Part shown: positions 19 to 29,535 of the stretch, in pieces
How positions within the stretch are numbered: the first letter of the stretch is position 1
Layout of the letters: each line of letters starts with the position of its first letter
NCBI GenBank assembly: GCA_002269645.1
Contig: NIVC01004066.1
Span: 31,632-61,978 of the forward strand
Direction: 5' to 3'
Source: Macrostomum lignano
Lineage: Eukaryota
Length of the DNA: 30,347 nucleotides
Position numbers and translations under genes: made by a program
The notes under the pieces: model-generated
What the model was told of the DNA's origin: nothing
The model's input: the letters and a program-made list of their open reading frames with translations, nothing else
Databases searched by the model: none

Positions 19-660
19 GTAGACACCTCTGCCCTTCCTGACACCCCTGTCTTCCCTGACACCTGCCCTGCCTGACAACTCTGCCTCCCTGACACCTCTG
101 CCCTCTCTGACAACTCTGCCCTTCCTGACACCCCTGTCTTCCTGACACCTGCCCTGCCTGACAACTCTGCCCTCCCTGACTCCTCTGCCCTCTCTGACAA
201 CTCTGCCCTTCCTGACACCCCTGTCTTCCCTGACACCTGCCCTGCCTGACAACTCTGCCCTCCCTGACACCTCTGCCCTCTCTGACAACTCTGCCCTCCG
301 TGACAACTCTGCCCTCCCTGACACCTGCCCTCCCTGACAACTCTGCCCTCCCTGACACCTGTGCCCTCCGTGACAACTCTGCCCTCCCTGACACCTGCCC
401 TCCCTGACAACTCTGCCTCCCTGACACCTGTGCCCTCCCTGACAACTCTGCCCTCCCTGACGCCCCTGCCTCCCTGACACCCCTGCTTTCCTGACACCTG
501 CCCTCCCTGACCCCTGCCTTCCTGACACCCCTGACTTCCTGACACCTGCCCTCCCTGACACCCCTACCTCCCTGACACCCCTGCCTCCCTGACACCTGCC
601 CTCCCTGACACTACCTGCCTCCCCTGACACAACTGTTTTTCCTGACAGCCCCTGACTTTC
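19..660. repeat. C-rich minisatellite, degenerate 16-20 bp unit CCTGACA(C/A)(C/A)CT(C)TGCC(C)T
   Basis: CCTGACA core recurs every ~16-20 bp from the window start to ~660. Confidence 0.95.
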
Positions 661-1688: not shown

Positions 1689-10042
<8,354 letters not shown>

Positions 10043-12429
10043 ATCACAATGTACATCTACGCGCTTGTAGGAGGCGATTTGCTGTAAAATTATACAAGCA
10101 TTTCTCACGAATCTGTTGAAATGATCAGATTGAGTGATATTGCTCGATTTGTAAAATATGACAGTTATGTATGAATATAGTGCTGCAGTTTTCTCTGAAC
10201 TATACTTCTAATTGCATAGTTGCAATCTCAAGTGAATGCTTTGAATCAATTGTTTCTAGAATACTATTACTAAATAATCTATCGATTTGTTAACAACGGG
10301 CGATAATCATCGCACTGTGCTTATATAGATTTTGTTTTGTCGCCTGAAATTTTTGCGCTTTGTGTTTCATTTATGATAGAATTTGTAACTAAGTGTATTT
10401 ATTATGACGAATTTCGGATCTCGGATCTCGTTAAAAATCGGATGCGGTTTTTAACGATTCTTGTCTCATTGTCGGTCCAGTAGAGAGATCCGATAGAGAA
10501 ACCGGCTCAATCGGCCACCGCTTCCATTTCAGAGCCTTAAGTTCACATGAAATCCCCATTTTTCCCCATTTATCCCATGCGGAAGCGGCCGGAGTGGAAG
10601 AAAGATCAATTACGCTTTTCTTGTCTATTTTGGGTCTGAATAGTGAGAATTTCGCAGCGGTTTGGTTGCCTGACTCACGGCTTCCAAATCGCGCTTAAGT
10701 TCACATCCTCTTTTGATTATTATTAACTCAGTTACAGTGAGAGTTAGACTAAGCTGTGTACATTACCTCGTAGCCCCGAGGTAAAGAAACTGCTATTTTA
10801 CTCGCACCTATGGCGAATGTCAGTTGAACTCGCGGCAGAAAAGTTTTCGTTCGAATTACGCATGTTTCCTTTTTTGATGTACATGTACATTTACGTATTA
10901 CGTATTACGTTGTCGTTATAAGAATTGAATTCGTGCTTTCTTATTTGAGATTTATTTTAGCCTTCAATAATAAGCTGGAATAGATGCTTAACAGGGAGGG
11001 TACCGTATGAAGGTAGGATATTGATTGTTAGCTTACGTGATGGATAAAATGTAAAATTTTAACATGGACTATACTGCAGAATTCCATGGAGACCAAATCT
11101 AAACAAGTTAGCTAGCGGATTTTAAATGGACCATCGACGTGTAAATTCCGATGGCTCTAGTGAGTTGACCGTAGGCTATTAGCAGAAATACTGTTTGAAT
11201 AGAACTACTTTATTTTTAAATCCATTCAGTTCAATCCAGAGAGCTTTAGTAAAAAAATAATTTATAGCAACGTCCTAAGGGCTACGCCTATTTTTGTATC
11301 AGTTCATGGACACGCTTAACGGTTTGCACGTTTTTTGGCGGGGAGCCGTCTGTTATTGTCTAATTGTTTGAAACGAAGCTGTTTACCAAAAAAAGTCCTA
11401 AGAGTTCAAAGCAAGAGACTTCTATTTTCATGCTCTAAAAATAAAGAAGGCTGTGCAATGAAGATGGAGGTCTAGATTTTATTTAGTCCGCAGAAATCTA
11501 CACACGAAAGTTTGTTTTTGATGCAGTGAATGTACACCGAAAGTCGAAGTTCCATTTTTTATGTACACGACGGTTAAAGTTCAAATCTGACATGACGAAA
11601 ACAAACTTCACATGAGTCTATCCACCTGTTTTTGGCTCTTATGTAAACAGTTAAATAATATAGCGAAAGAAAACAAACTGAAGTGTTTTCGTTGAAAACC
11701 GAAAATAGAAGTTCCCTTTTCACACTATAAAAAGAGCATGATTTTAGTGGATAGACTTGGCTAACCTACACAGTTTCTATTGCCATTGCTTTCACCTGAG
11801 AGACTTTTAATCTTCATACATTTGCTATCGAGGAAGTAACATCAAATTTTCGTAAGTAGCCATCATATTTGTAAGTTTTACAGCAATTAATTCCAGCTTT
11901 ATTGCAAGCATCTGCCATGCATTTGTGTGTCGATTTCTAGTATTTTTTAAACTTCAAGATAATAAACTTAATTTTGAACCTTCCATTGATTTCGCTTGTT
12001 GTTGTATATTAACAGAGAAGACATACCAGTAGAGTATGCCCCAGCCCAATGTTTTGTTGTCTAGGGCACAGCCTATTATTTTATAATAAATTATTAACTA
12101 CATGCATCCCAAGAGGAGATAATCTACCGGAGGAATACGATAGCTCGAACCGCTTAAGCGAACCATTGCCTTCTTACTTAAATGTAGCAGCTCCAGGTCG
12201 GAGCAGAAGACATAACACTTGTATATACTGGCTTTGTTCCGAAATAGGAGTTCAGAATGCCCAAACTTAAGAAGAAAGCTGTGAATTTACTAAACCGCTA
12301 GAGCCGTAAAAATTTGAAAGTGCATCTGGTCTCTTTTTCGAGAAGCTGAGAGTCTAAACACTGGAAGGTCATTTGGCATAGAGGCTAGCAGACACAACAG
12401 TTTTCAGACAGGAGCAGTCGCCACAGATT

Positions 12430-12770
12430 CTATGGTGGGCGCGGGGCTTGACTTACTTGACTTTAGCTGCAGGGGGCGTCGTCCGTCGGTACAGCGAGGA
12501 CGCGACGGAGACTGCCGGCCCCTGGCTACCAATAACTTCCAGCGAAGTGATGTCGCTCAGGAGGACCCGTCGGTCTCGCCTGCAGCGCGGCCCCTCCTCA
12601 CCAGCGGTGGGGGATAAATCAGCTCGCCCTGTGTCCCTTGGGGTACCCGTCGAGCACGGGTATGCTCTCGGGCCTACTAACGTCGGAGAGAACGGGGTTG
12701 GGCCCGAGGTGAGTAGTGAGCCTGGCCCTGTTGAAAACCGGGCTGTGGCAGATAAGGGCGCGAGAGAGAA
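12430..12770 (-). mobile_element. 3' remnant (zinc-knuckle tail plus 3' UTR) of an RNase H-bearing non-LTR retrotransposon
   Basis: 12595-12760 aligns by eye to 28600-28770, and 12528-12585 aligns to 27626-27682. The minus strand gives degenerate LICHSPVF...LGPNPVLSDV and ends in an AAGTCAAGTAAGTCAAG-type tail. Confidence 0.75.
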
Positions 12771-13068
12771 AGCACACAAAGTCCCCAAATTTGTAGGGCC
12801 CCTCAGCGATCCATTTGGCGCCTGGCTAGTGCTCTAAGCAATCGTGTCTGGTGCCGCAGATGTAATGCATGCAGCTATTCCATAAATGTCTCCTAAACAC
12901 TCAGTAAATTACATTGTTTTAACCCGCCACAGGAGCAACATGTAGAATCTATCAAGGAATAACTTAAAAGCTTCTGGATAAATTTATTTTTACAAAATGG
13001 AAAGGTAGAATGCAGTGATCTATTAGTATCCATTTTCCCGTTTACAAAAACTTTAACAGGGCGAGTCG

Positions 13069-16000
13069 ATGTCTGGAGAAACCGAGACACAAAAGCGGTT
13101 TAACGGCCTCGTCTCAGATTTGGGCCTGTCAAAATGGTTTCCAGGAAGACTTATTGCCGAGACTGCAATCGCGATTAGGCCAGCTGACTTGGATAAACCA
13201 GGCTTGCAGTTTGTCCGGCAAATCATTGGTTGTCTAGGAAAGGTACGAGATGAACTTCCTTTGCACCAAGAGCAGGATTGCACAAGCAAGATTGATTGTC
13301 AGCAGCAGGAGGATGGTTGGGACGAAGATGAAGACGAAGGAGATCAGTCTGGAGACGTGAATCCACTGGATGTCTTACTGACAGTTTTTGTCTGCTGCAG
13401 CGAGGACCTGAAGCAGCTGATCTGTCATAGGCTGTTCTATTGCAAGCTGGCTATTCCATTCATATATAAAGATGAGACAGACAGGTGGGTGTCAAACCAC
13501 AGCAACCTGAGACCCATTGCCATCGAGTACAAAGATAAGCAGGGTAAAGCTATAGAAATGCCTATATTTTCGGACCGAGAAGTATTTTGCGTCGCCTTCG
13601 TGCGCATTGGCGAACACTCTGTGTCGAAGTCCAAGATACTGAACTATATATTAAGCGATGGAAAGCATGACACGTTCTTCAATCGAGAGAGTAAAAATGG
13701 ATCGGCGAGAGTGAAGTACTCAAGAGGACTTATTGAAACAGCTGTGTACATTCCACCCGGAGACGGAAGTGACCCTTTTGTTGCTCTTAATCTGAGAGGT
13801 GACGTCACTGAAAATCCGGAGCTATCCGGTGTGCTTTCCAAGTGCTCCAGTACTCTAGTTTGCATGGTTGCTGTAGAAGACGCGTTGCAGAACGCTTCTC
13901 GACTCCAGGAGTTGGCTGCTGAGGCAAACAATATGGTTCTGGTTCTAACAAAAAGAGACTCCAATACTAAAGCTGACTCTGACTTTAAAAACTGTCTCCG
14001 TAAAAGCATAAGCGGCATTTGGAATAGAGCGACGGTTGTTCTGGCATTCAAAGCCAAGACAATCAAGAGCTGTCGGGAGATTCAGGCCGAAGTTACGAAC
14101 GTTTTACGGCAAAAAATGGGCCCCTCAAAGATCATTTCCGAGCAATTAAAATCCACTGGTCTTTTCCCAATGGACTCAGGAGATGGCGGACAAAGCCCAG
14201 CTCAACTGGCATCACTTGTGACGCAAAACTTTCGCTCCTATGAAAGCAAGACGAAATTTAAGAACGAGTTTCTGCCGTTGCACATGCAACTGTGGCAAGA
14301 ATACAGCAAACTGTACAAAGAGACATTTTCTGCAAAAGCTCAAAAGGAAAATCTCGCAAAGATGCAAGAGCGAATGCTTGAAATCAGAAACAAACAAGTC
14401 GAACTGTGCATGCAGTTTTCCCCCATCATCAGGGATTTATTCTCGAGTCTAAATGCTGCTGCGAGCCAGAGTGAGGAAATGGTAGGGGCCATCGTACTGC
14501 TAGAAGGAATCAAGCAACGATTCTATGAATGTTGCCTTGAAGTTGTTCCGCCGCTCCAGAGAGCATTTCTGGAAGCCAAAGAAAAGCATGACGCATGCCA
14601 GAGTGAGACTGAGATTGAAGCGCTACGGCAGAAATTACAAGAAGCTGAGAAGGAGCTGGTGAATGCATCGCTTGACTTGAACAGTCTATTTAGAGAAGCC
14701 GGCCAGATCTACGAGGCAAGCCAGGAAAATTCAACCGTGTTTACACCTCGCCTAAGGGACGAAGTATTGAATTTGCCAGACACGTTTGCAAAGCTGCTAC
14801 TTCACGGAATGCCACTGGAGATTTTGGATGGCGATTCCAGCAACATCCCAATTTTTTGGATATCCGCAGTGCTTCGGGCTTGTCACAAGCTTGTTGGCGA
14901 GAAGAAACTCTTCATCATTTCCGTGCTAGGAGTGCAGAGCTCGGGCAAGTCCACTCTTCTAAACACCATGTTTGGCCTGCGGTTTCCCGTGAGTGCCGGC
15001 CGATGTACGAGGGGTGCCTACCTCCAGCTAGTGAAAGTGTCTCCCGAAGCACGTCTACCTTTTGACTATGTCGCTATTCTCGACACCGAGGGTCTGAAAG
15101 CTCCAGAGCTGGGCATTTCGAGTCCTCGTCACGACAATGAGCTTGCAACTCTCGTCATTGGCTTGGGCGATGTTTCCATAATAAACATTAAAGGTGAGAA
15201 CTCTTCCGACATGAAGGAGATATTGCCCATCGCAGTGAATGCGTTTCTGCGCATGCGCCAAGTGAACAAGAAGCTGGAAATTCAGCGAAGCTGCATCTTC
15301 ATTCACCAGAACGTCTCTGCTATTTCTGCCAAGGAGAAGATGGAAGAAGCCACTGCGGTGATGAAGAAGAGCTTGGACGACTTTACTAGAGAGGCCGCGG
15401 AAGGTGAAGGCCTCGCGGATGTGAAAACTTTCAACCAGATTATTTCATTCGACAGCAAAATGGACATTTTCTTCTTGCCTGACCTCTGGTTCGGGGATCC
15501 GCCCATGGCCTCAGTGAATCCGGGCTATGCAGAGAAGGTGCAGGTGATTCGAGACCACATCATGTTTCAAATGGCATTGAAGCAGAAAACGTATGTCAGT
15601 TTTAATGATTTCACTATTCGAATCGGTGATATGTGGAAGGCTATTATGTCAGAAGACTTTGTCTTCAGCTTTAGGAACAGCATCGAAATGAAGGCTTACA
15701 TTCAAATGGAGCTGGCTCTTATTGATTGCAAAGACCAGATCGATGATTTCGGAAACGACTGGCTGCACAAGACGGCGTTCGTACAACTCAGGAATGCCTC
15801 CAGTGAGGAGAGCCTCTTTGCCGTAAAACAGAGTCTTCAGCAAGAGATGAGTGAGTCAATGAGCAGCATTCTTTCCAGAACAAAAGAACAATTGGAGCAA
15901 TACTTCGAAGAAGACTCTTACAAAGAGCACAGCGTTCAATGGAAGTCGGGAAGCCTCTTGGCTTTGGACCGGGCGTGCAACTTGAAGCAGGAAGAGCTTC

Positions 16001-17820
16001 ATGATCGAATTAAAGATGAATTGAAAATCCAGCGGCTAGAGATCAACCAGGCAGCAAAGCACAAACAATGGGAGAGCACTGCCCTCCAAAAAGCGAAAGA
16101 TTTGGCCCAAAAAATGACCGGTTCCAAAATCTCAGAAGAGGAGTTAAAACAATGCTTCGATATTCTGTGGGAGACAATAATAAGCGAGCTACCCACTGAG
16201 CAGCCGCATGACGCTGCTCCGATTGATGAGCAGATTGAGAGATTGCTACAAGACTTGTTCCACAAGGATGTCTCCATATTAAAAGCTCAGCTTCAGCAGA
16301 CTCCACTTAGCCAGACAATGTCTGAAGACGATTTTGAGCTGTTTCTATCCGACTGCATCGAAGAAATTAGCTACACTAACGAAGCCGCCCCAACAGCTCG
16401 AAGCAAGGCTTTCACAGCAGGCGGTAAAGCGTTTAAATCTGCCCAACTGCTGCTCCGTGACACTGCCAAGAAGGACTCTGGGTTCTACATTGCTGACGCC
16501 CGGAAGATTTTGGCTGAGGTCATAAGAGTTTTGCGAGATGAGCGAAGCAATCTGGCTAACGACGGCATCGGCCTTACAGCGGCCTTTGAGATCAAAGTGT
16601 CTATCGGAATCTGCAAACTTGCCATTCCCACGTTTGAAAAGATCAACGAAGCTTATCGAGCAAAGCTTAGTATTGCGGCGCGGCTTCAGACTCTGAAGGA
16701 GAAGATCTGGAATCTCTTCAAAAATATGGTAGCCAGCAAGGCTGGTGAAAAGATTTCGGCCGATTTCGTCCGGGATCATTTGGCTGGCCTTATCAAGGCG
16801 GCCGTCTTGGAGAGAATGGCTGACAAGCTGAAAGCTCATGTGCGTAACCAGATAGGAAAGCATAAATATTACCTTATAGTCATGATGCTGACAGAGTGGG
16901 CCGACAAGGATAATTTCCGATCGATCATATCTTACATAGAAAACTCCAAAGTGGCCGCCCTTGAATGGCTCACTGCCTTCATCGATCGCTTTCTGTTCAC
17001 TCGAAACGAAGCGCAGAGGACGGCCTTCTCAGAGATCGTGGAAGCTGATGTCGCCGCATCAATCTTTAAAACAGCTCACGATTCATGCGATCAAGCATGC
17101 AAAGCAATGGCGGGGAGGTCTGGAGACGATTGCATGAAGGAGTGGAGCGAAGACTTCTGCCAGCGCATGTCCCGAGAGCTGGCCGTGAAAGCCGAAGACT
17201 TTGCCGAGATATTCACGCAGCCGATTGGCGACTTCTCCGACTTCTCAGAGTGCCTGAAAGAAGGCCTGCGCGTCAACTCTCGTCAACTGACGGAGTGGCT
17301 GAGCACACTGGATGAAAGCTCAGTGCAATGGCCTGGCAAAAGTACTCTGTACTCTGCTGTGCTTGACAGCCTGTGGGGCTGCGATGCTCAGTGCCCGTTC
17401 TGCAATGAGCCGTGCTCCAATGCGTCCGCTGAACACCAAGAGTTCTCTCACAAATGCATCCAGCACAGACCCCAGTGTACTGCCGGAATGCGCAGAGTTG
17501 GATCGAACCAGGCAGTACCGGACACGTGTGGCTTCAGCATTAATGATCAAAGAATGAGATTTGGCTGCGTAAAATGTGAAAAGAATGGAGTGCATATGTT
17601 TACTTACCATCCATACAAAGAATACAAGAAGTTCTTTCCCTCGTGGGACATTGCTCCTGACGCATCAAACACTGGTTCGAAATTCTGGATGTGGTTTGTC
17701 TGGACTTTTAGAGAGAAATTAAAAGAACAGTACGATTACAAAATTGACGAACTTCCTGGTGCTTGGGCCGCCGTCACCAAGGACGCCGCGCAGCAGAGCC
17801 TGAGAGAACTGCTGAATTAA
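13069..17820 (+). CDS. GVIN1: Very large inducible GTPase family protein (VLIG/GVIN1/URGCP-like), 1583 aa, single coding exon
   Basis: G1 GVQSSGKSTLLNTMFG (14929-), G2 region AGRCTRGA, G3 DTEGL (15082-), HDNELATLVIGLGDVSIINIKGE and FIHQNV match the VLIG-type G domain. N-terminal NPLDVLLTVFVCC...CKLAIPF and C-terminal GCDAQCPFCNEPC...HRP...HPYKEY...FW.WF are hallmarks of the family. The symbol indicates family, not proven orthology. Confidence 0.92.
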   Translation: MSGETETQKRFNGLVSDLGLSKWFPGRLIAETAIAIRPADLDKPGLQFVRQIIGCLGKVRDELPLHQEQDCTSKIDCQQQEDGWDEDEDEGDQSGDVNPLDVLLTVFVCCSEDLKQLICHRLFYCKLAIPFIYKDETDRWVSNHSNLRPIAIEYKDKQGKAIEMPIFSDREVFCVAFVRIGEHSVSKSKILNYILSDGKHDTFFNRESKNGSARVKYSRGLIETAVYIPPGDGSDPFVALNLRGDVTENPELSGVLSKCSSTLVCMVAVEDALQNASRLQELAAEANNMVLVLTKRDSNTKADSDFKNCLRKSISGIWNRATVVLAFKAKTIKSCREIQAEVTNVLRQKMGPSKIISEQLKSTGLFPMDSGDGGQSPAQLASLVTQNFRSYESKTKFKNEFLPLHMQLWQEYSKLYKETFSAKAQKENLAKMQERMLEIRNKQVELCMQFSPIIRDLFSSLNAAASQSEEMVGAIVLLEGIKQRFYECCLEVVPPLQRAFLEAKEKHDACQSETEIEALRQKLQEAEKELVNASLDLNSLFREAGQIYEASQENSTVFTPRLRDEVLNLPDTFAKLLLHGMPLEILDGDSSNIPIFWISAVLRACHKLVGEKKLFIISVLGVQSSGKSTLLNTMFGLRFPVSAGRCTRGAYLQLVKVSPEARLPFDYVAILDTEGLKAPELGISSPRHDNELATLVIGLGDVSIINIKGENSSDMKEILPIAVNAFLRMRQVNKKLEIQRSCIFIHQNVSAISAKEKMEEATAVMKKSLDDFTREAAEGEGLADVKTFNQIISFDSKMDIFFLPDLWFGDPPMASVNPGYAEKVQVIRDHIMFQMALKQKTYVSFNDFTIRIGDMWKAIMSEDFVFSFRNSIEMKAYIQMELALIDCKDQIDDFGNDWLHKTAFVQLRNASSEESLFAVKQSLQQEMSESMSSILSRTKEQLEQYFEEDSYKEHSVQWKSGSLLALDRACNLKQEELHDRIKDELKIQRLEINQAAKHKQWESTALQKAKDLAQKMTGSKISEEELKQCFDILWETIISELPTEQPHDAAPIDEQIERLLQDLFHKDVSILKAQLQQTPLSQTMSEDDFELFLSDCIEEISYTNEAAPTARSKAFTAGGKAFKSAQLLLRDTAKKDSGFYIADARKILAEVIRVLRDERSNLANDGIGLTAAFEIKVSIGICKLAIPTFEKINEAYRAKLSIAARLQTLKEKIWNLFKNMVASKAGEKISADFVRDHLAGLIKAAVLERMADKLKAHVRNQIGKHKYYLIVMMLTEWADKDNFRSIISYIENSKVAALEWLTAFIDRFLFTRNEAQRTAFSEIVEADVAASIFKTAHDSCDQACKAMAGRSGDDCMKEWSEDFCQRMSRELAVKAEDFAEIFTQPIGDFSDFSECLKEGLRVNSRQLTEWLSTLDESSVQWPGKSTLYSAVLDSLWGCDAQCPFCNEPCSNASAEHQEFSHKCIQHRPQCTAGMRRVGSNQAVPDTCGFSINDQRMRFGCVKCEKNGVHMFTYHPYKEYKKFFPSWDIAPDASNTGSKFWMWFVWTFREKLKEQYDYKIDELPGAWAAVTKDAAQQSLRELLN

Positions 17821-18889
17821 TTCATATTTTATTATTTATCTCCAATATTGACTGACAATACAATGTGGGATTCGAGAACTGTTTCAGCCTAAAGTTGGTG
17901 GTAGAGCTATCAGAATTTTATGCCATCCAGGATAGGTGTTCCCAAATGAGCTTAGGAATAATAGACTCAACAGTTTGACACAGAGTTGATCTTTGTTTTG
18001 AATGGAGGAGTAGCACTCATCTATGGTGAAATTTTCATGATCGTTCATGCGTGGTAACTGTCACGTTATTAAATTCATGTTTCAATGTAATCATGTTTTC
18101 AGCTGGACTAATCTACTATACCTACATGTACATTTAGTGTGCAGTTACATGTTTAACTCCGAATGCAGGGGCCGACATCATGAAGGAAGTTCTAGTTGAC
18201 GAGTGATATTTCTCACGATTCTCACAGTTTAATGATGAATTTTATTGCATCACAGTTGTACTTTCTTTATGAAATCGGCCCCAGAAGTTTTCCAGCGTTT
18301 ATTCGACTTCAATACTTTGCACTCTTTCTAACCTATATTCCATATTATTTGGTCTGTAGCTACCTTTCCTTGTTAAGCTTACAGCTTAGTGACATTAGCA
18401 TGCAAACCAAGTAACTTTTTGTTTCTAACTTTTACTAAATAACCGCATGCTGTTCATGTTTTTCTGTTTTACTGGATAATATTTTTCGAGAACTAATGCT
18501 CTGTGTAAAAACTTTCCAAAATTTTCTATTATCGAAACTTTATAACCGATTGCTTTATGAGCTTTTAAAACTATTTTATTCAGACAAGACACAAAATCTT
18601 TTCTATTGTTAACAATAATCTCGCTCACTTTGCAAATTGAAGTACTTTCTCTATCAACATACACCAATATGCTACTACAACTGAGTAGCAAGTTTTGCTT
18701 GTCAATACATATTTTTCTTCACAGTCTTGGCTTTTCATTGGCTGTCGGAGCAAAGAAACTTTATTGGACATGAATATTATCAAGTGGAATTTTACTGAAG
18801 TGTTCTGAAATGAAATAAATAGTTCTTCTTAAATTATTGACACATACAGAATTATCAAGACTGAGACAGAACATCTAGATAAATCAAAA

Positions 18890-19100
18890 ACACTAGGAAA
18901 TAAAAGATAAAACACTAGGATATAACAAATAGAAAACTAAGATAGTACAGATAGAACACTAAGATAGTACAGATAGAACACTAGGATAGAACAGACAGAA
19001 CACAAGGATAGAACAGATAGAACACTAGGATAGAACAGATAGAACACTAGGATAGAACAGATAGAACAATAGGATAGAACAGATAAAACAGATAGAACAC
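18890..19100. repeat. GATAGAACA / GATAGAACACTAG degenerate tandem array
   Basis: Repeated GATAGAACA cores ending a few bases before the LHFPL ATG. Confidence 0.9.
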
Positions 19101-19106
19101 AGCTCG

Positions 19107-25167
<6,061 letters not shown>

Positions 25168-26484: not shown

Positions 26485-26775
26485 AACGGAACCCTCTCGG
26501 GTCATGGCTGTTTTGCCAGGCATCGCTATCTCCAGGAAAATCCGTAGTGAGGAATGCCGGCCCTTTCTGTCTCTCTGGTGTCGGGAATGCGGAGCACTTC
26601 ATCTGTAAATGCCCCGCATTTACTCAAGACAGGCTCGCCTACCTCATCTCCCGAAACCTGGGCCTTTCCCACGTTTTCAGGCCCAAGAACCTCTGCCAGC
26701 TAGTCCGCAATCTAAGGGCCACAGGGCGAGCGACCATCCACCTTCTGGACTCTCCGGAGGGGACCGCTCTGAGGA
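26485..26775 (+). mobile_element. Non-LTR retrotransposon 3' ORF fragment (CCHC knuckle), same superfamily as 27600-29535
   Basis: LSGHGCFARHRYLQ, frameshift, then PFCLSGVGNAEHFICKCPAF parallels GCFSRHRFLQ...CPFCRSGSENAEHFICHCPVF on the minus strand at 28750-28870. Confidence 0.8.
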
Positions 26776-26789
26776 CACCGGCACCACCG

Positions 26790-27290
26790 GATCTCCCTGC
26801 GTGACAACGCAGCACCAGCTGCCCGTGGTCGCCAGGGGTTTGCGGAATGAGCGAAGACGCGCCATCGCTGTATCCGGATGCCCGGAGCCCCTTGCAGCTG
26901 AGTCAAAGTAAGTCATGTCAACATCGGAACGCAGAGCACTGCGGTCTTCTGCGTTTTGACCACCAAGCTGACACTCTCAGCAAAAGCGACCAGCCTGTCC
27001 AACTGTCGCTGGGCACCCTCGACAGTCGAGGACAGCAGGGCGAGATAATCGGCGTAGCCAAGCAAACTGAGCCACCTCTCCGGTTGTCGTCGACCCACGC
27101 GTCACCGCCGCAGAAAGCTGTCGTCGTTGGTGGAAAAAGAGCCATTCCAGTTAAGCATCCGCAGCACCCAGTTAAGCACGAGAACGAACAGAAAATTCGT
27201 GAGCGCATCTCTCTGGAGCACTCCAGAGGAATCTCGAAAGAGTCCGACAAACCGTTAAAAAGTACTTCAATAAGTTTAGGGCAATGCCCT
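26790..27290 (-). mobile_element. Decayed reverse transcriptase fragment of an RTE-like non-LTR retrotransposon
   Basis: Frameshifted SDSFEI/SGVLQRDALTNFLFVLVLNWVLR (cf. GVLQGD.L.PFLF...DW.LR) and LGYADYLALLSSTVEGAQRQLDRLVAFAESVSLVVKTQKT (degenerate YADD motif). Confidence 0.8.
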
Positions 27291-27599: not shown

Positions 27600-29535
27600 G
27601 ACCGCCCATTTCGCTAGCCTTTGGCGACCAATGACTTCCATCGAAGTGATGTCGCTCAGGGGGACCCGTCGGTCTCGCCTGCTGAAGAGTTTAAGAGTGG
27701 TGATCAGTCACTCAAAAACTCCCACTTCTAGACACTGGAGAACAAGTGCCTAGGTATTTACCAGTTCAAATAACTTACTGCGGTGGATCCTCTTGTGGTT
27801 GGTAGACTTCTGGTTCTTGCGGTGTGTGTGACTCTGTCTAACTTGGCTGAGCAGTAGTGACGGCCGATTTGGAGTAGTCTTCTTGAGTCCTTGACTTTTA
27901 TCTGTGGGTCGACCAAAACGAGAGCGAATCAGAATTCTTGTGACGGTCCTCGAGCTCGGAATTAACAATAGAACGTGCGCCCTAATGAACAATTGAATTC
28001 TGTGATAGGTCCTCCTGAAGGGCGGCTTCTTCGTTACGTCCGAAACGTGACGGATAACTCAATTAAATCAATAAATCCTCTAGGAATATATCCTAGGCAA
28101 TAAGGAGGCCTTTTTCAACTGTGTCGACAATAAACAGCTCTCTTAAACTCAATGAATCAACTTATTAACGCTAACAATAAAAGAACTGAAACCAGTAAAC
28201 GCTTACCAATTGGACAGGTGTGGTCCCTCAGAGATTGGTCTTCCTGTTTCTTCGGAGTCTTCTTAGAGACCGCTCTGAGTCTGAATTTTTTACTCAAATT
28301 TTCACTTATATTTATAGCAAAATTTTGGAGAAAAACCGGTTTGGGATTGGGTATTTACTTAGGTCAAAAATGTTTAATTAAGCTTTCATGCATGTTTGAG
28401 CATTACCATATATAAGCAAATACAGCTGTTGGAATCCGGTTCCTTGATCAAACAATGTAGGGTTCTAAATCATTCTGTTTGCGCGTGATTCCTAAAAATA
28501 GATATGTCTCATTCTAGAATAAATTGACTTTCCTAGAATATTACTTTAAGTAGAGCATTACGGTATGGTTTAATAACTCTCTACACTGCTGCGCGGTCCT
28601 CCTCACCCGCGGTGGGGAAGAAATCAGCTCGTCTCGTGTCCCTGAGGTACCGGGCGATCGGCGGTATGCTCTCAGGCATGCAAACGTCGGAGAGAACCGG
28701 GTTTGGCCCGAGGTGAGTGAGCCTGCCCCCCCTGGGGAAAACTGGGCAGTGGCAGATAAAGTGCTCGGCGTTTTCACTGCCTGAGCGGCAGAAGGGGCAC
28801 CGCTTCTCAGGTACCTGGCCCTGAAGGAAGCGGTGACGAGAGAAGCAGCCTACGCAGTAGGGCTCTACGCAGGAGGGGGAGGGACAGGGGACGGCAGTAC
28901 GGGATTGCCTGCAATTCCAAGTGTCGTAACACCTGCGGAGATGCTCGGAATCAGCCCAGCGCTTAACACGGGAGTTGATCACCGAGGCGGGGATGGGGCC
29001 CCTGGGCCCGGCCCCAGCAGCGCGCCGGCGGAGCCAGCCTTGGCCAGCAGGTCGGCGCGCTCGTTGCCGAGGAAACCAGCAGATCCATCTGAGCTCCACC
29101 TGGTTGCCTAGCGCAAGCCCGTTGAGCTGGGCGTTGCAGTCCAAGGCAGATCTGGAGCTGGTGGTGCTGCGGCAGAGGGCCCGAAGGGCTGCCTGGCTTT
29201 CAGAGTGAAATATATATTTCCGACAGCTGAGCTGCCTTCGGCGCAGCTCTGCCGCGCAGGAGCTGATGGCAAGCATCTCGCTCCGAAAAACACTGAAGTT
29301 GAGTCCAGTTGTGCTGGGAGTAGCTCCACACCGCTTCTCCCTTGAAGAAGATGCATGCTCCGAAACCTGGAAGACCATGCCTCATTGAGCCGTCAGTGTA
29401 ACAGTGGACTTCAGAATCGCTCCAGCTGTCACTCGCCTCGTGTCGAGGCTGAATGGTGACCTTATACCTCTGGCTCAAGAGAAGGGTGGCTGAGATCGAG
29501 TCCGTGAGGATGTTGCGCCCGCAATCAGCAAACAT
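27600..29535 (-). mobile_element. 5'-truncated non-LTR retrotransposon (I/R1/Tad/Loa-type) with RNase H, CCHC knuckle and 3' UTR, interrupted by an insertion at 27683-28585
   Basis: CYTDGS...GFGA, frameshift, then SVFRSEMLAI...IFHSESQAALRAL...CNAQLNGLALGNQVELRW is a non-LTR RNase H. CPFC...AEHFICHCP is the knuckle. The 3' UTR resumes left of the insertion and matches the copy at 12430-12600. Confidence 0.85.
27683..28585. mobile_element. Solo LTR-like insertion (903 bp, TG...CA ends, 4-bp TSD CTGC)
   Basis: [CTGC 27679-27682] TGAAGAGTT...AACTCTCTACA [CTGC 28586-28589]. Removing the insert and one TSD restores GGTCTCGCCTGCTGCGCGG, matching the uninterrupted copy GGTCTCGCCTGCAGCGCGG near 12572. 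Non-coding, with imperfect terminal inverted repeats. Confidence 0.75.

What the first reader, a model, noticed from the sequence alone, without database searches (positions are those of the whole stretch)
13069..17820. Complete VLIG/GVIN1-type giant GTPase in an apparently interferon-less invertebrate
Seen: an intact 1583-aa ORF with the full G1-G3 motifs, long predicted helical regions on both sides of the G domain, and the conserved C-terminal Cys/His block. Known: vertebrate GVIN1/VLIG is an interferon-inducible GTPase related to the GBP/atlastin class and linked to cell-autonomous immunity; interferons are a vertebrate innovation. Inference: if the host is a flatworm, this is a candidate for an uncharacterised, interferon-independent cell-autonomous defence effector. 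It is the best candidate for an undescribed system in this window.
Basis: partly seen in the sequence, partly recalled or inferred. Interest (0 to 1): 0.78.

Follow-up and report, generated by a model that had tools for sequence, protein, structure and literature searches.

The report
Flatworm giant VLIG-family GTPase gene
The window holds an intact, already catalogued gene of the flatworm Macrostomum lignano for a 179 kDa GTPase of the same family as vertebrate interferon-induced GVIN1; it is one of at least five paralogue lineages in an animal without interferon, and its function is untested.

Summary
Window 13069-17820 (+) is an uninterrupted 1583-codon ORF. Pfam places it in the VLIG/URGCP family (URGCP_GTPase 354.8 bits, cut-off 55). 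The G1, G2 and G3 motifs and a C-terminal Cys/His block are invariant across homologues. The host guess is also right: the exact protein is already in GenBank/UniProt as a Macrostomum lignano hypothetical protein, labelled 'VLIG-type G domain-containing'. The assembly holds four near-identical copies of it.

New here:
- M. lignano has at least five diverged VLIG paralogue lineages (35-38% identity over full length) that form one clade with 100% bootstrap, so the expansion is lineage-specific.
- This gene is co-orthologous to all sampled vertebrate GVIN1-like and URGCP-like proteins, not an orthologue of GVIN1.
- Comparison of two copies shows purifying selection (dN/dS 0.13 outside the N-terminus; G domain 0 nonsynonymous, 9 synonymous). 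The N-terminal tip is variable.
- The predicted G domain matches GBP1, atlastin and Sey1 folds, and the P-loop is Sey1-like.

The family is large (2252 clusters at 50% identity) and automated annotation already names members in echinoderms and mussels; a krill protein carries UniProt's VLIG-type G label. This is therefore a new member of a known kind. An interferon-independent defence role is plausible but untested.

The parts
13069..17820 (+). Complete single-exon ORF (1583 aa, about 179 kDa) of a VLIG/URGCP-family giant GTPase; one of four copies of M. lignano gene Mlig017367
13057..13059 (+). CAG, a candidate splice or trans-splice acceptor 9 nt upstream of the ATG. The context TAACAG has one mismatch to the M. 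lignano SL acceptor motif YTNCAG. Inference only.
   Evidence: motif from PMC8629364
13069..13248 (+). Short N-terminal helical region (aa 1-60). Codons 4-27 differ strongly between gene copies (9 nonsynonymous, 1 synonymous).
13249..13356 (+). Acidic linker (aa 61-96), 38% Asp+Glu over aa 60-98; low model confidence (pLDDT below 50 at aa 67-94)
13357..14118 (+). URGCP N-terminal alpha/beta domain (aa 97-350). It carries a conserved P-loop-like GEHSVSKSK motif (S186 K187 S188 N192 invariant in 44 sequences) and NLRGD (aa 241-245). Possibly a degenerate first G domain.
14197..14808 (+). Helical linker before the G domain (aa 377-580)
14815..15558 (+). VLIG-type large G domain (aa 583-830): G1 at 14929-14955, G2 at 15001-15015, G3 at 15082-15093, invariant HQN at 15304-15312
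15559..17328 (+). Long all-helical C-terminal region (aa 831-1420) with no solved structural relative
17329..17817 (+). C-terminal small alpha/beta domain with the invariant Cys/His block (aa 1438-1487, nt 17380-17529). Probably zinc-binding. Corresponds to Pfam GVIN1_C (PF26772) in the precomputed annotation.

Best explanation
Shown: this is a transcribed, selectively constrained gene of Macrostomum lignano for a soluble giant GTPase of about 179 kDa in the VLIG/URGCP family. Its layout is a short N-terminal helical tip, an acidic linker, a URGCP alpha/beta domain with a degenerate P-loop-like motif, a helical linker, a catalytically complete GBP/atlastin/Sey1-type large G domain, a helical region of about 600 aa, and a Cys/His domain. 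It belongs to a flatworm-specific expansion of at least five intronless or intron-poor paralogue lineages.

Inferred, at about 45% for the last step: like other large GTPases of this class, it binds GTP, pairs through its G domains and assembles into higher-order oligomers. Like human GVIN1, which coats cytosolic Burkholderia, the assembly probably forms on a foreign or damaged surface as a cell-autonomous defence. Interferon cannot control it in this animal, so control would be by some other signal or constitutive. The variable N-terminal tip and the paralogue diversity may set target specificity.
For: Family: Pfam URGCP_GTPase E 6.8e-106 and URGCP E 4e-42, and GVIN1_C in the precomputed annotation. 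Catalytic motifs and the Cys/His block are invariant across homologues. Fold: the G domain matches the hGBP1 LG domain (TM 0.70 on the target, E 3e-7), atlastin-1, Sey1p and RNF112; the family profile hits SEY1 at E 3.6e-8. Host and transcription: the exact sequence is deposited for M. lignano, and GenBank gene models of that assembly derive from RNA-seq transcripts (PMC5730564). Constraint: dN/dS is 0.13 for codons 31-1583; the G domain has 0 nonsynonymous and 9 synonymous changes. Immune-like dynamics: at least five paralogue lineages are monophyletic with 100% bootstrap, mussels also show several paralogues grouping by phylum, and the N-terminal tip has 9 nonsynonymous against 1 synonymous change. 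Mechanistic precedent: human GVIN1 forms a coat on B. thailandensis and is predicted to dimerise through its LG domains (bioRxiv 10.1101/2025.03.24.645074). M. lignano also keeps at least six Mx genes without interferon (PMC11789081).
Against: No expression, localisation or biochemical data exist for this gene; no paper mentions it. The only invertebrate expression datum I found, in sea cucumber, is a decrease after Vibrio challenge. Human GVIN1 needs an interferon-induced cofactor, which may have no flatworm counterpart. The vertebrate co-orthologue URGCP is described as a proliferation and NF-kB regulator, not an effector. The N-terminal excess of amino-acid changes rests on ten substitutions between two near-identical copies. 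The protein has no membrane anchor or CaaX box, and its helical region has no GBP-like structural match.
Confidence: 0.5

Rival explanations
1. It is a non-immune large GTPase: a signalling scaffold or proliferation regulator like vertebrate URGCP, or a housekeeping membrane or organelle remodelling factor like Sey1 and atlastin. The paralogue number would then reflect the duplicated, repeat-rich M. lignano genome rather than an arms race.
For: The flatworm clade is equally related to proteins named URGCP-like and GVIN1-like. URGCP is reported to act on NF-kB and proliferation. The P-loop GxQSxGKS matches Sey1's GSQSTGKS, not the GBP arginine-finger form. The G domain is under strong purifying selection. 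The M. lignano DV1 assembly is highly redundant.
Against: Assembly redundancy explains the four copies at over 98% identity but not five lineages at 35-38% identity. There is no transmembrane segment or lipidation signal for a fusogen role. Phylum-specific grouping of multiple paralogues in mussels is more typical of defence families. Where function is known, the only mechanistic data in the family concern defence.
Confidence: 0.35
2. It is a decaying or non-functional intronless copy (a retrocopy or redundant duplicate) that merely still has an open frame.
For: The gene is a single exon in a genome that averages 4.9 introns per gene. Retroelement-like repeats lie just upstream and downstream. 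One copy (g3) is truncated by a 1-bp deletion.
Against: A 1583-codon open frame is kept in three copies. dN/dS is 0.13 with zero amino-acid changes in the G domain. All family-invariant residues are retained. The gene model is transcript-based. The intronless state is shared with paralogue Mlig023000. The g3 deletion sits in a CCC run, a typical long-read assembly error.
Confidence: 0.04
3. The contig is contaminant or vertebrate-derived DNA, not flatworm.
For: Database names of homologues are dominated by vertebrates.
Against: The 99% match is to M. lignano contigs of 44-224 kb with collinear flanks. The best non-flatworm identity is 31-33%, to echinoderms and mussels, and vertebrates are at 25-27%. 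The closest relatives are other M. lignano genes, and vertebrates form a separate 100%-supported clade.
Confidence: 0.01

Closest known systems
[quoted passage not shown]
   Same: It has the same Pfam domains (URGCP, URGCP_GTPase, GVIN1_C) and the same invariant G1-G3 motifs and Cys/His block. It has the same order of parts that was predicted for human GVIN1: N-terminal domain, flexible linker, first LG-like domain, helical linker, LG domain, C-terminal domain. The ORF is on a single exon; that this is also true of mouse VLIG-1 is from my memory of Klamp et al. 2003.
   Different: Identity is only 25-27%. It is shorter, at 1583 aa and 179 kDa against the 200-285 kDa quoted for VLIGs. It lacks the extra N-terminal families PF26773, PF25974 and PF26771 listed for many homologues. 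It is not a one-to-one orthologue, because the flatworm clade branches outside the whole vertebrate clade. Interferon cannot be the inducer.
Vertebrate URGCP (up-regulator of cell proliferation)
   Same: It shares the URGCP and URGCP_GTPase domains. Many homologues of similar length (about 1500-1650 aa) are named URGCP-like, and they are as closely related as the GVIN1-like ones.
   Different: URGCP literature concerns NF-kB and proliferation in tumour cells. No such role has been tested in any invertebrate.
Invertebrate VLIG-family homologues (Lytechinus, Holothuria and Mytilus named 'GVIN1-like'; Meganyctiphanes labelled VLIG-type G domain)
   Same: These are the closest non-flatworm relatives, at 30-33% identity over nearly full length. 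They have the same core architecture, and mussels likewise carry several paralogues that group by phylum.
   Different: They belong to different phylum-specific clades, and several carry long N-terminal extensions. None has been functionally studied in the papers I could search.
GBP / atlastin / Sey1(RHD3) large GTPases of the dynamin superfamily
   Same: The G-domain fold is shared (Foldseek E about 3e-7, probability 1.00). G1, G2 and G3 are aligned, and the P-loop is identical in type to Sey1.
   Different: Sequence similarity outside the P-loop to switch II segment is negligible. There is no arginine at the GBP1 P-loop position (GLYRTGKS against GVQSSGKS). There is no GBP-like helical domain match, no CaaX box and no transmembrane segment. 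The extra URGCP domain and the Cys/His domain are specific to the VLIG family.
Mx proteins of M. lignano (precedent for interferon-type GTPases without interferon)
   Same: Both are conceptually interferon-associated dynamin-superfamily GTPases in vertebrates that are present as several copies in this flatworm (PMC11789081).
   Different: Mx is a different family, and that paper does not mention VLIG or GVIN.

Membership tests
VLIG/GVIN1-URGCP giant GTPase family | VLIG-type G domain profile above the curated threshold | tested here: met
   PF25683 URGCP_GTPase scores 354.8 bits against a cut-off of 55, E 6.8e-106, aa 423-821. UniProt labels the identical protein 'VLIG-type G domain-containing'.
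VLIG/GVIN1-URGCP giant GTPase family | URGCP-like domain N-terminal to the G domain | tested here: met
   PF25496 scores 145 bits against a cut-off of 27, aa 97-350. It is modelled as an alpha/beta domain.
VLIG/GVIN1-URGCP giant GTPase family | Conserved G1 (GxQSxGKST), G2 (RCT) and G3 (DTEG) residues | tested here: met
   All are present and invariant in 44 homologues. In the 37-sequence alignment S628 and T629 are at least 90% conserved and the rest invariant.
VLIG/GVIN1-URGCP giant GTPase family | C-terminal GVIN1_C domain with the Cys/His block | tested here: met
   PF26772 appears in the precomputed annotation of the identical or 99% protein. C1438, C1442, C1445, C1449, H1461, H1466 and C1487 are invariant in 44 sequences. 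My Pfam copy lacks this model, so I did not score it directly.
VLIG/GVIN1-URGCP giant GTPase family | Very large size (200-285 kDa in the review definition) | tested here: inconclusive
   179 kDa and 1583 aa is below the range quoted in PMC8286824. However, family members of 1500-1650 aa are common. Size is descriptive rather than diagnostic.
VLIG/GVIN1-URGCP giant GTPase family | Induction by interferon | not testable with these tools
   No expression data are available. By established knowledge, interferons are restricted to vertebrates, so this part of the name cannot apply to a flatworm.
GVIN1 orthologue (one-to-one) | Groups with GVIN1 to the exclusion of URGCP-like proteins in a tree | tested here: not met
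   In an NJ tree on 747 columns, the flatworm paralogues form their own clade (100%) outside a vertebrate clade (100%) that holds both GVIN1-like and URGCP-like names.
GBP/atlastin/Sey1 class of dynamin-superfamily GTPases | Large G-domain fold | tested here: met
   Foldseek hits: hGBP1 LG 2b8w at E 3.2e-7 (chain B; chain A TM 0.70 on the target), atlastin-1 7ol3 at E 2.7e-7, Sey1p 5ca9 at E 3.5e-5.
GBP/atlastin/Sey1 class of dynamin-superfamily GTPases | Membership of the GBP family proper (GBP sequence profile, P-loop arginine, GBP helical domain, CaaX box) | tested here: not met
   There is no GBP Pfam hit. The P-loop is GVQSSGKS against GBP1's GLYRTGKS. The C-terminal model has no PDB match. 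The protein ends in ...RELLN.
GBP/atlastin/Sey1 class of dynamin-superfamily GTPases | Nucleotide-dependent G-domain dimerisation and stimulated GTP hydrolysis | not testable with these tools
   This needs purified protein. It has only been predicted, for human GVIN1 by AlphaFold3.

The most novel reading that the evidence does not exclude
The M. lignano VLIG paralogues are interferon-independent, pathogen-coating defence GTPases. The variable N-terminal tips and paralogue diversity would set target range. On this reading the giant-GTPase arm of cell-autonomous immunity, like Mx, predates interferon and was later placed under interferon control in vertebrates. Because M. lignano is transparent, open to RNAi and transgenic, it would become the first invertebrate system in which the assembly of a giant GTPase on microbes can be watched and dissected.
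Probability: 0.3. Interest if true: 0.6.

Novelty: new member of a known kind. Interest (0 to 1): 0.35.

Why it matters
VLIG/GVIN proteins are the least understood of the four interferon-inducible GTPase families. The first mechanistic result, GVIN1 coating Burkholderia, dates only from 2025. Showing that a flatworm keeps an expanded, constrained set of these genes adds to the emerging picture that the effector GTPases are older than the cytokine that controls them in vertebrates; Mx has already been shown to follow that pattern in this same animal. It also points to a tractable invertebrate in which to ask what the ancestral trigger and target were. On its own, though, the gene is an ordinary family member that public databases already label. 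No experiment has been done, and similar homologues are annotated in echinoderms and molluscs, with a krill member labelled VLIG-type.

Tried and rejected
2. The word-index homologue search missed the flatworm paralogues entirely. Repeating it with a profile of the five paralogues returned the same list and no further flatworm proteins. Presence or absence in other Platyhelminthes therefore stays untested.
3. I tested whether the URGCP domain is an internal duplicate of the G domain with hhalign. Only the P-loop-like segment aligned, at probability below 1%. This is inconclusive.
4. Foldseek of the C-terminal 763-aa model against the PDB gave nothing below E 0.6. There is no structural analogue for the helical region or the Cys/His domain.
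5. A sequence search of the PDB gave only weak SEY1, GBP and Mx hits and no solved VLIG structure.
6. A literature search for the gene identifier found nothing. Searches for invertebrate VLIG studies found only passing mentions in transcriptome lists.
7. The MACPF domain (PF01823) listed in precomputed annotation for the sea-cucumber homologue was not reproduced at E <= 1e-3, so I make no claim of a pore-former fusion.
8. Loci L003 and L004 never reached the Python sandbox. I examined the g3 truncation with the alignment tool instead.
9. Contamination, vertebrate origin and pseudogene readings were considered and rejected on collinearity, identity levels, the tree and dN/dS.
Full report
OBSERVATION. 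Window 13069-17820 (+) is an uninterrupted ORF of 1583 codons plus stop. By chance this has a probability of about 1e-33. G1 is GVQSSGKS at aa 621-628, G2 is GRCTRG with T647, and G3 is DTEG at aa 672-675. In a 44-sequence alignment of homologues, G621, Q623, S624, G626, K627, S628, T629, R645, T647, D672, E674 and G675 are invariant. In a 37-sequence alignment that includes the flatworm paralogues, S628 and T629 are at least 90% conserved and the rest remain invariant, together with an H746-Q747-N748 motif that follows a beta strand where G4 would be expected. The C-terminal Cys/His block is also real: C1438, C1442, C1445, C1449, H1461, H1466 and C1487 are invariant, and H1456, R1467 and P1468 nearly so.

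STRUCTURE. I made two AlphaFold2 models with 44-row alignments. The model of aa 1-860 has pLDDT 82.8 and pTM 0.82. The model of aa 821-1583 has pLDDT 86.5 and pTM 0.72. Together they give this layout:
- a short helical tip (aa 1-60);
- an acidic linker of low model confidence (pLDDT below 50 at aa 67-94; 38% Asp+Glu over aa 60-98);
- an alpha/beta domain (aa 97-350);
- a helical linker (aa 377-580);
- the G domain (aa 583-830);
- an almost purely helical region to about aa 1420;
- a small alpha/beta Cys/His domain.

WHAT IT IS. Pfam gives URGCP_GTPase (PF25683; 354.8 bits, cut-off 55) and URGCP (PF25496; 145 bits, cut-off 27). It gives only sub-threshold Dynamin_N and RHD3_GTPase hits. Precomputed annotation of the same protein adds GVIN1_C (PF26772). 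The G-domain model matches the hGBP1 LG domain (TM 0.70 on the target), atlastin-1, Sey1p, RNF112 and SMG9, with Foldseek E down to 2.7e-7. A family profile hits SEY1 at E 3.6e-8 and GBP1 only marginally. In those alignments the P-loop is of the Sey1 type (GSQSTGKS) and lacks the arginine seen in GBP1 (GLYRTGKS). The C-terminal 763 residues have no structural relative in the PDB, and no VLIG structure has been solved. The protein has no transmembrane segment and no CaaX box. The order of parts is the same as that predicted for human GVIN1: N-terminal domain, flexible linker, LG domain, helical linker, second LG domain, C-terminal domain. The first alpha/beta domain carries a conserved P-loop-like G-x4-SKSK motif and an NLRGD motif. 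My profile-profile test of an internal duplication was not significant, so 'degenerate first G domain' remains a suggestion.

HOST AND STATUS IN DATABASES. The exact window protein is already in NCBI and UniRef. It belongs to a 90% cluster of four Macrostomum lignano entries: the window's own, BOX15_Mlig017367g1, g2 and g3. UniProt labels them 'VLIG-type G domain-containing protein'. They lie on four contigs of assembly GCA_002269645.1. The g2 locus is collinear with the window over about 20 kb. That assembly is known to be redundant, with 180 Mb in duplicated blocks of at least 95% identity, and its GenBank gene models derive from an RNA-seq-guided transcriptome (PMC5730564). The copies are therefore expected, and the gene is transcribed. 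The g3 copy is truncated at 1372 aa by a 1-bp deletion in a CCC run (window 17170-17172). This could be a long-read homopolymer error or a real frameshift. The flatworm guess is right and contamination is excluded.

CONSTRAINT. Window against g2 shows 49 substitutions in 4752 nt and no indels. Nei-Gojobori dN/dS values are as follows:
- overall: 0.22;
- codons 31-1583: 0.13;
- codons 401-837: 0.04;
- G domain: 0 nonsynonymous against 9 synonymous changes;
- codons 1-30: 9 nonsynonymous against 1 synonymous change.

This is a working gene with a variable N-terminal tip, though the tip result rests on small numbers. Divergence is mosaic. Window 12981-15578 holds 52 differences (2%), while 15579-19975 holds one in 4.4 kb (Poisson P about 2e-13). 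That points to recombination or gene conversion between copies, or to a chimeric haplotype assembly.

FAMILY CONTEXT. An exhaustive HMMER scan with aa 400-1583 found 2252 clusters at 50% identity with E <= 1e-3, and 1018 with E <= 1e-30. The closest are other M. lignano genes: Mlig023000g1 (1948 aa), Mlig027448g1/Mlig026403g5 (1751-1800 aa), Mlig002402g1-4 (1638 aa) and Mlig019641g1 (1841 aa). They are 37-41% identical over the matched stretches and 35-38% over full length. There is also a 3625-aa UniParc entry with six matched stretches that is probably a fused model. All have the same core Pfam architecture and keep the invariant G-domain residues. Mlig023000g1 is also a single 5847-nt exon, in a genome that averages 4.9 introns per gene.

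In a neighbour-joining tree (747 columns, 200 bootstraps) the five flatworm lineages are monophyletic (100%), with Mlig017367 sister to the other four (97%). The sampled mussel, echinoderm and vertebrate proteins each form their own clade (85%, 100% and 100%), and proteins named GVIN1-like and URGCP-like both sit in the vertebrate clade. The gene is thus a co-orthologue of the whole vertebrate VLIG/URGCP set, not of GVIN1. The family shows the phylum-by-phylum expansion typical of defence genes. Named non-vertebrate members include Lytechinus, Holothuria and Mytilus, and a protein of the krill Meganyctiphanes that UniProt labels VLIG-type.

MECHANISM. The following is shown: an intact, conserved GTP-binding and hydrolysis apparatus in a GBP/atlastin/Sey1-type fold; a soluble multi-domain giant protein; purifying selection; transcript-based annotation; and a lineage-specific paralogue expansion.

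The following is inferred from the class. Its members dimerise through their G domains on GTP binding and build oligomers, and this has been predicted for human GVIN1. The one functional study in the family shows GVIN1 coating cytosolic B. thailandensis and blocking actin tails, with an interferon-induced cofactor. From this I infer GTP-driven self-assembly on a foreign or damaged surface as a cell-autonomous defence, regulated by something other than interferon.

I put the family assignment at above 0.95 and the defence role at about 0.45. The main rival, at about 0.35, is a non-immune role: signalling or proliferation as reported for URGCP, or membrane remodelling as for Sey1. The tree cannot exclude it, because URGCP-like proteins are equally related. 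The only invertebrate expression datum I found is a decrease of a Gvin1-like transcript in sea-cucumber coelomocytes after Vibrio challenge, which does not help the defence reading.

COMPARISON AND NOVELTY. The gene is a member of a known family and passes every sequence-level membership test I could run. It fails one-to-one orthology with GVIN1, and it fails membership of the GBP family proper. It is already deposited and auto-labelled. Automated annotation already recognises invertebrate VLIG homologues, and these appear in passing in coral, mussel, clam and sea-cucumber transcriptome papers. I found no dedicated study of them, and no paper mentions this gene. The conceptual point, an interferon-type GTPase in an animal without interferon, has been made for Mx with M. 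lignano (at least six Mx genes) as an example; that paper does not discuss VLIG (PMC11789081).

The new elements here are the flatworm-specific five-lineage expansion, the intronless structure shared by two paralogues, the constraint pattern with a variable tip, and the Sey1-type P-loop. That makes it a new member of a known kind, of moderate interest (0.35).

SURROUNDINGS. The window is typical repeat-rich M. lignano DNA. It holds many minisatellite arrays and an (AGAT)n tract of about 1.3 kb. It also holds a PDZ-domain exon at 6615-7322 (+), an LHFPL-like exon at 19107-19607 (+), and retroelement-like ORFs at 26.5-29.5 kb. A repeat related to the retroelement-like region lies just upstream of the gene at 12274-12859. 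No second VLIG gene lies in the window. A CAG at 13057-13059, 9 nt before the ATG, may be a splice or trans-splice acceptor. The M. lignano spliced leader ends in ATG (PMC8629364) and would be in frame there. This is inference only.

Noticed in passing
window 12981-19975, compared with L001 9913-16907: Divergence between two copies of the locus is mosaic. There are 52 differences in 12981-15578 (2%) but a single difference in 15579-19975 (4.4 kb). This suggests gene conversion or recombination with a breakpoint near codon 837, or a chimeric haplotype assembly.
   Followed up: partly
window 13078-13149 (codons 4-27): There are nine nonsynonymous and one synonymous difference between the window and the g2 copy in the first 30 codons, against dN/dS 0.13 for the rest. 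The N-terminal tip may be variable, but the numbers are small.
   Followed up: partly
window 17170-17172; L004 about 14102: The g3 copy of the gene is truncated to 1372 aa by a 1-bp deletion in a CCC run and so lacks the Cys/His domain. This could be a long-read homopolymer error or a genuine pseudogenised copy.
   Followed up: partly
window 13057-13068: A CAG 9 nt upstream of the ATG may be a splice or trans-splice acceptor. The M. lignano spliced leader ends in ATG, which would be in frame with the ORF and add Met-Gly-Glu-Ser.
   Followed up: no
window 12274-12859, 27617-27682 and 28586-28759: A GC-rich repeat lies immediately upstream of the gene. It is related to retroelement-like sequence near 27.6-28.8 kb. 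This upstream stretch is only 86% identical, with indels, to the g2 copy, so the two copies differ in sequence from about 90 bp upstream of the start codon.
   Followed up: partly
window 6615-7322 (+): An ORF encodes a PDZ domain (Pfam E 1.9e-12) followed by a poly-Gln tract. It is probably an exon of a neighbouring gene.
   Followed up: no
window 19107-19607 (+): An ORF has a match to the LHFPL (lipoma HMGIC fusion partner-like) tetraspan family (E 5.5e-8). It is probably the first exon of the downstream neighbour.
   Followed up: no
window 22-630, 1846-2338, 2792-3740, 4292-5257, 9124-9700, 19793-20346, 21049-21481, 22605-23900: Minisatellite arrays are unusually dense (periods 18-292 bp), and there is an (AGAT)n tract of about 324 units. 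The large ORFs listed in these regions are repeat artefacts.
   Followed up: no
window 26547-26804 (+) and 28581-29535 (-): These ORFs share a Cys/His motif (...AEHFICxCPxF...) and have no Pfam hit. They look like remnants of a retroelement, present in two diverged copies.
   Followed up: no
P0065 (UniParc UPI0007A154EE, 3625 aa): The closest relative outside the gene's own cluster has six separate matched stretches. It probably represents tandem VLIG paralogues fused in an older gene model, which hints at clustered paralogues elsewhere in the genome.
   Followed up: no
P0002/P0064 (Holothuria leucospilota, 2582 aa): Precomputed annotation lists a MACPF domain (PF01823) on this sea-cucumber VLIG homologue. 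My Pfam scan did not reproduce it at E <= 1e-3.
   Followed up: partly
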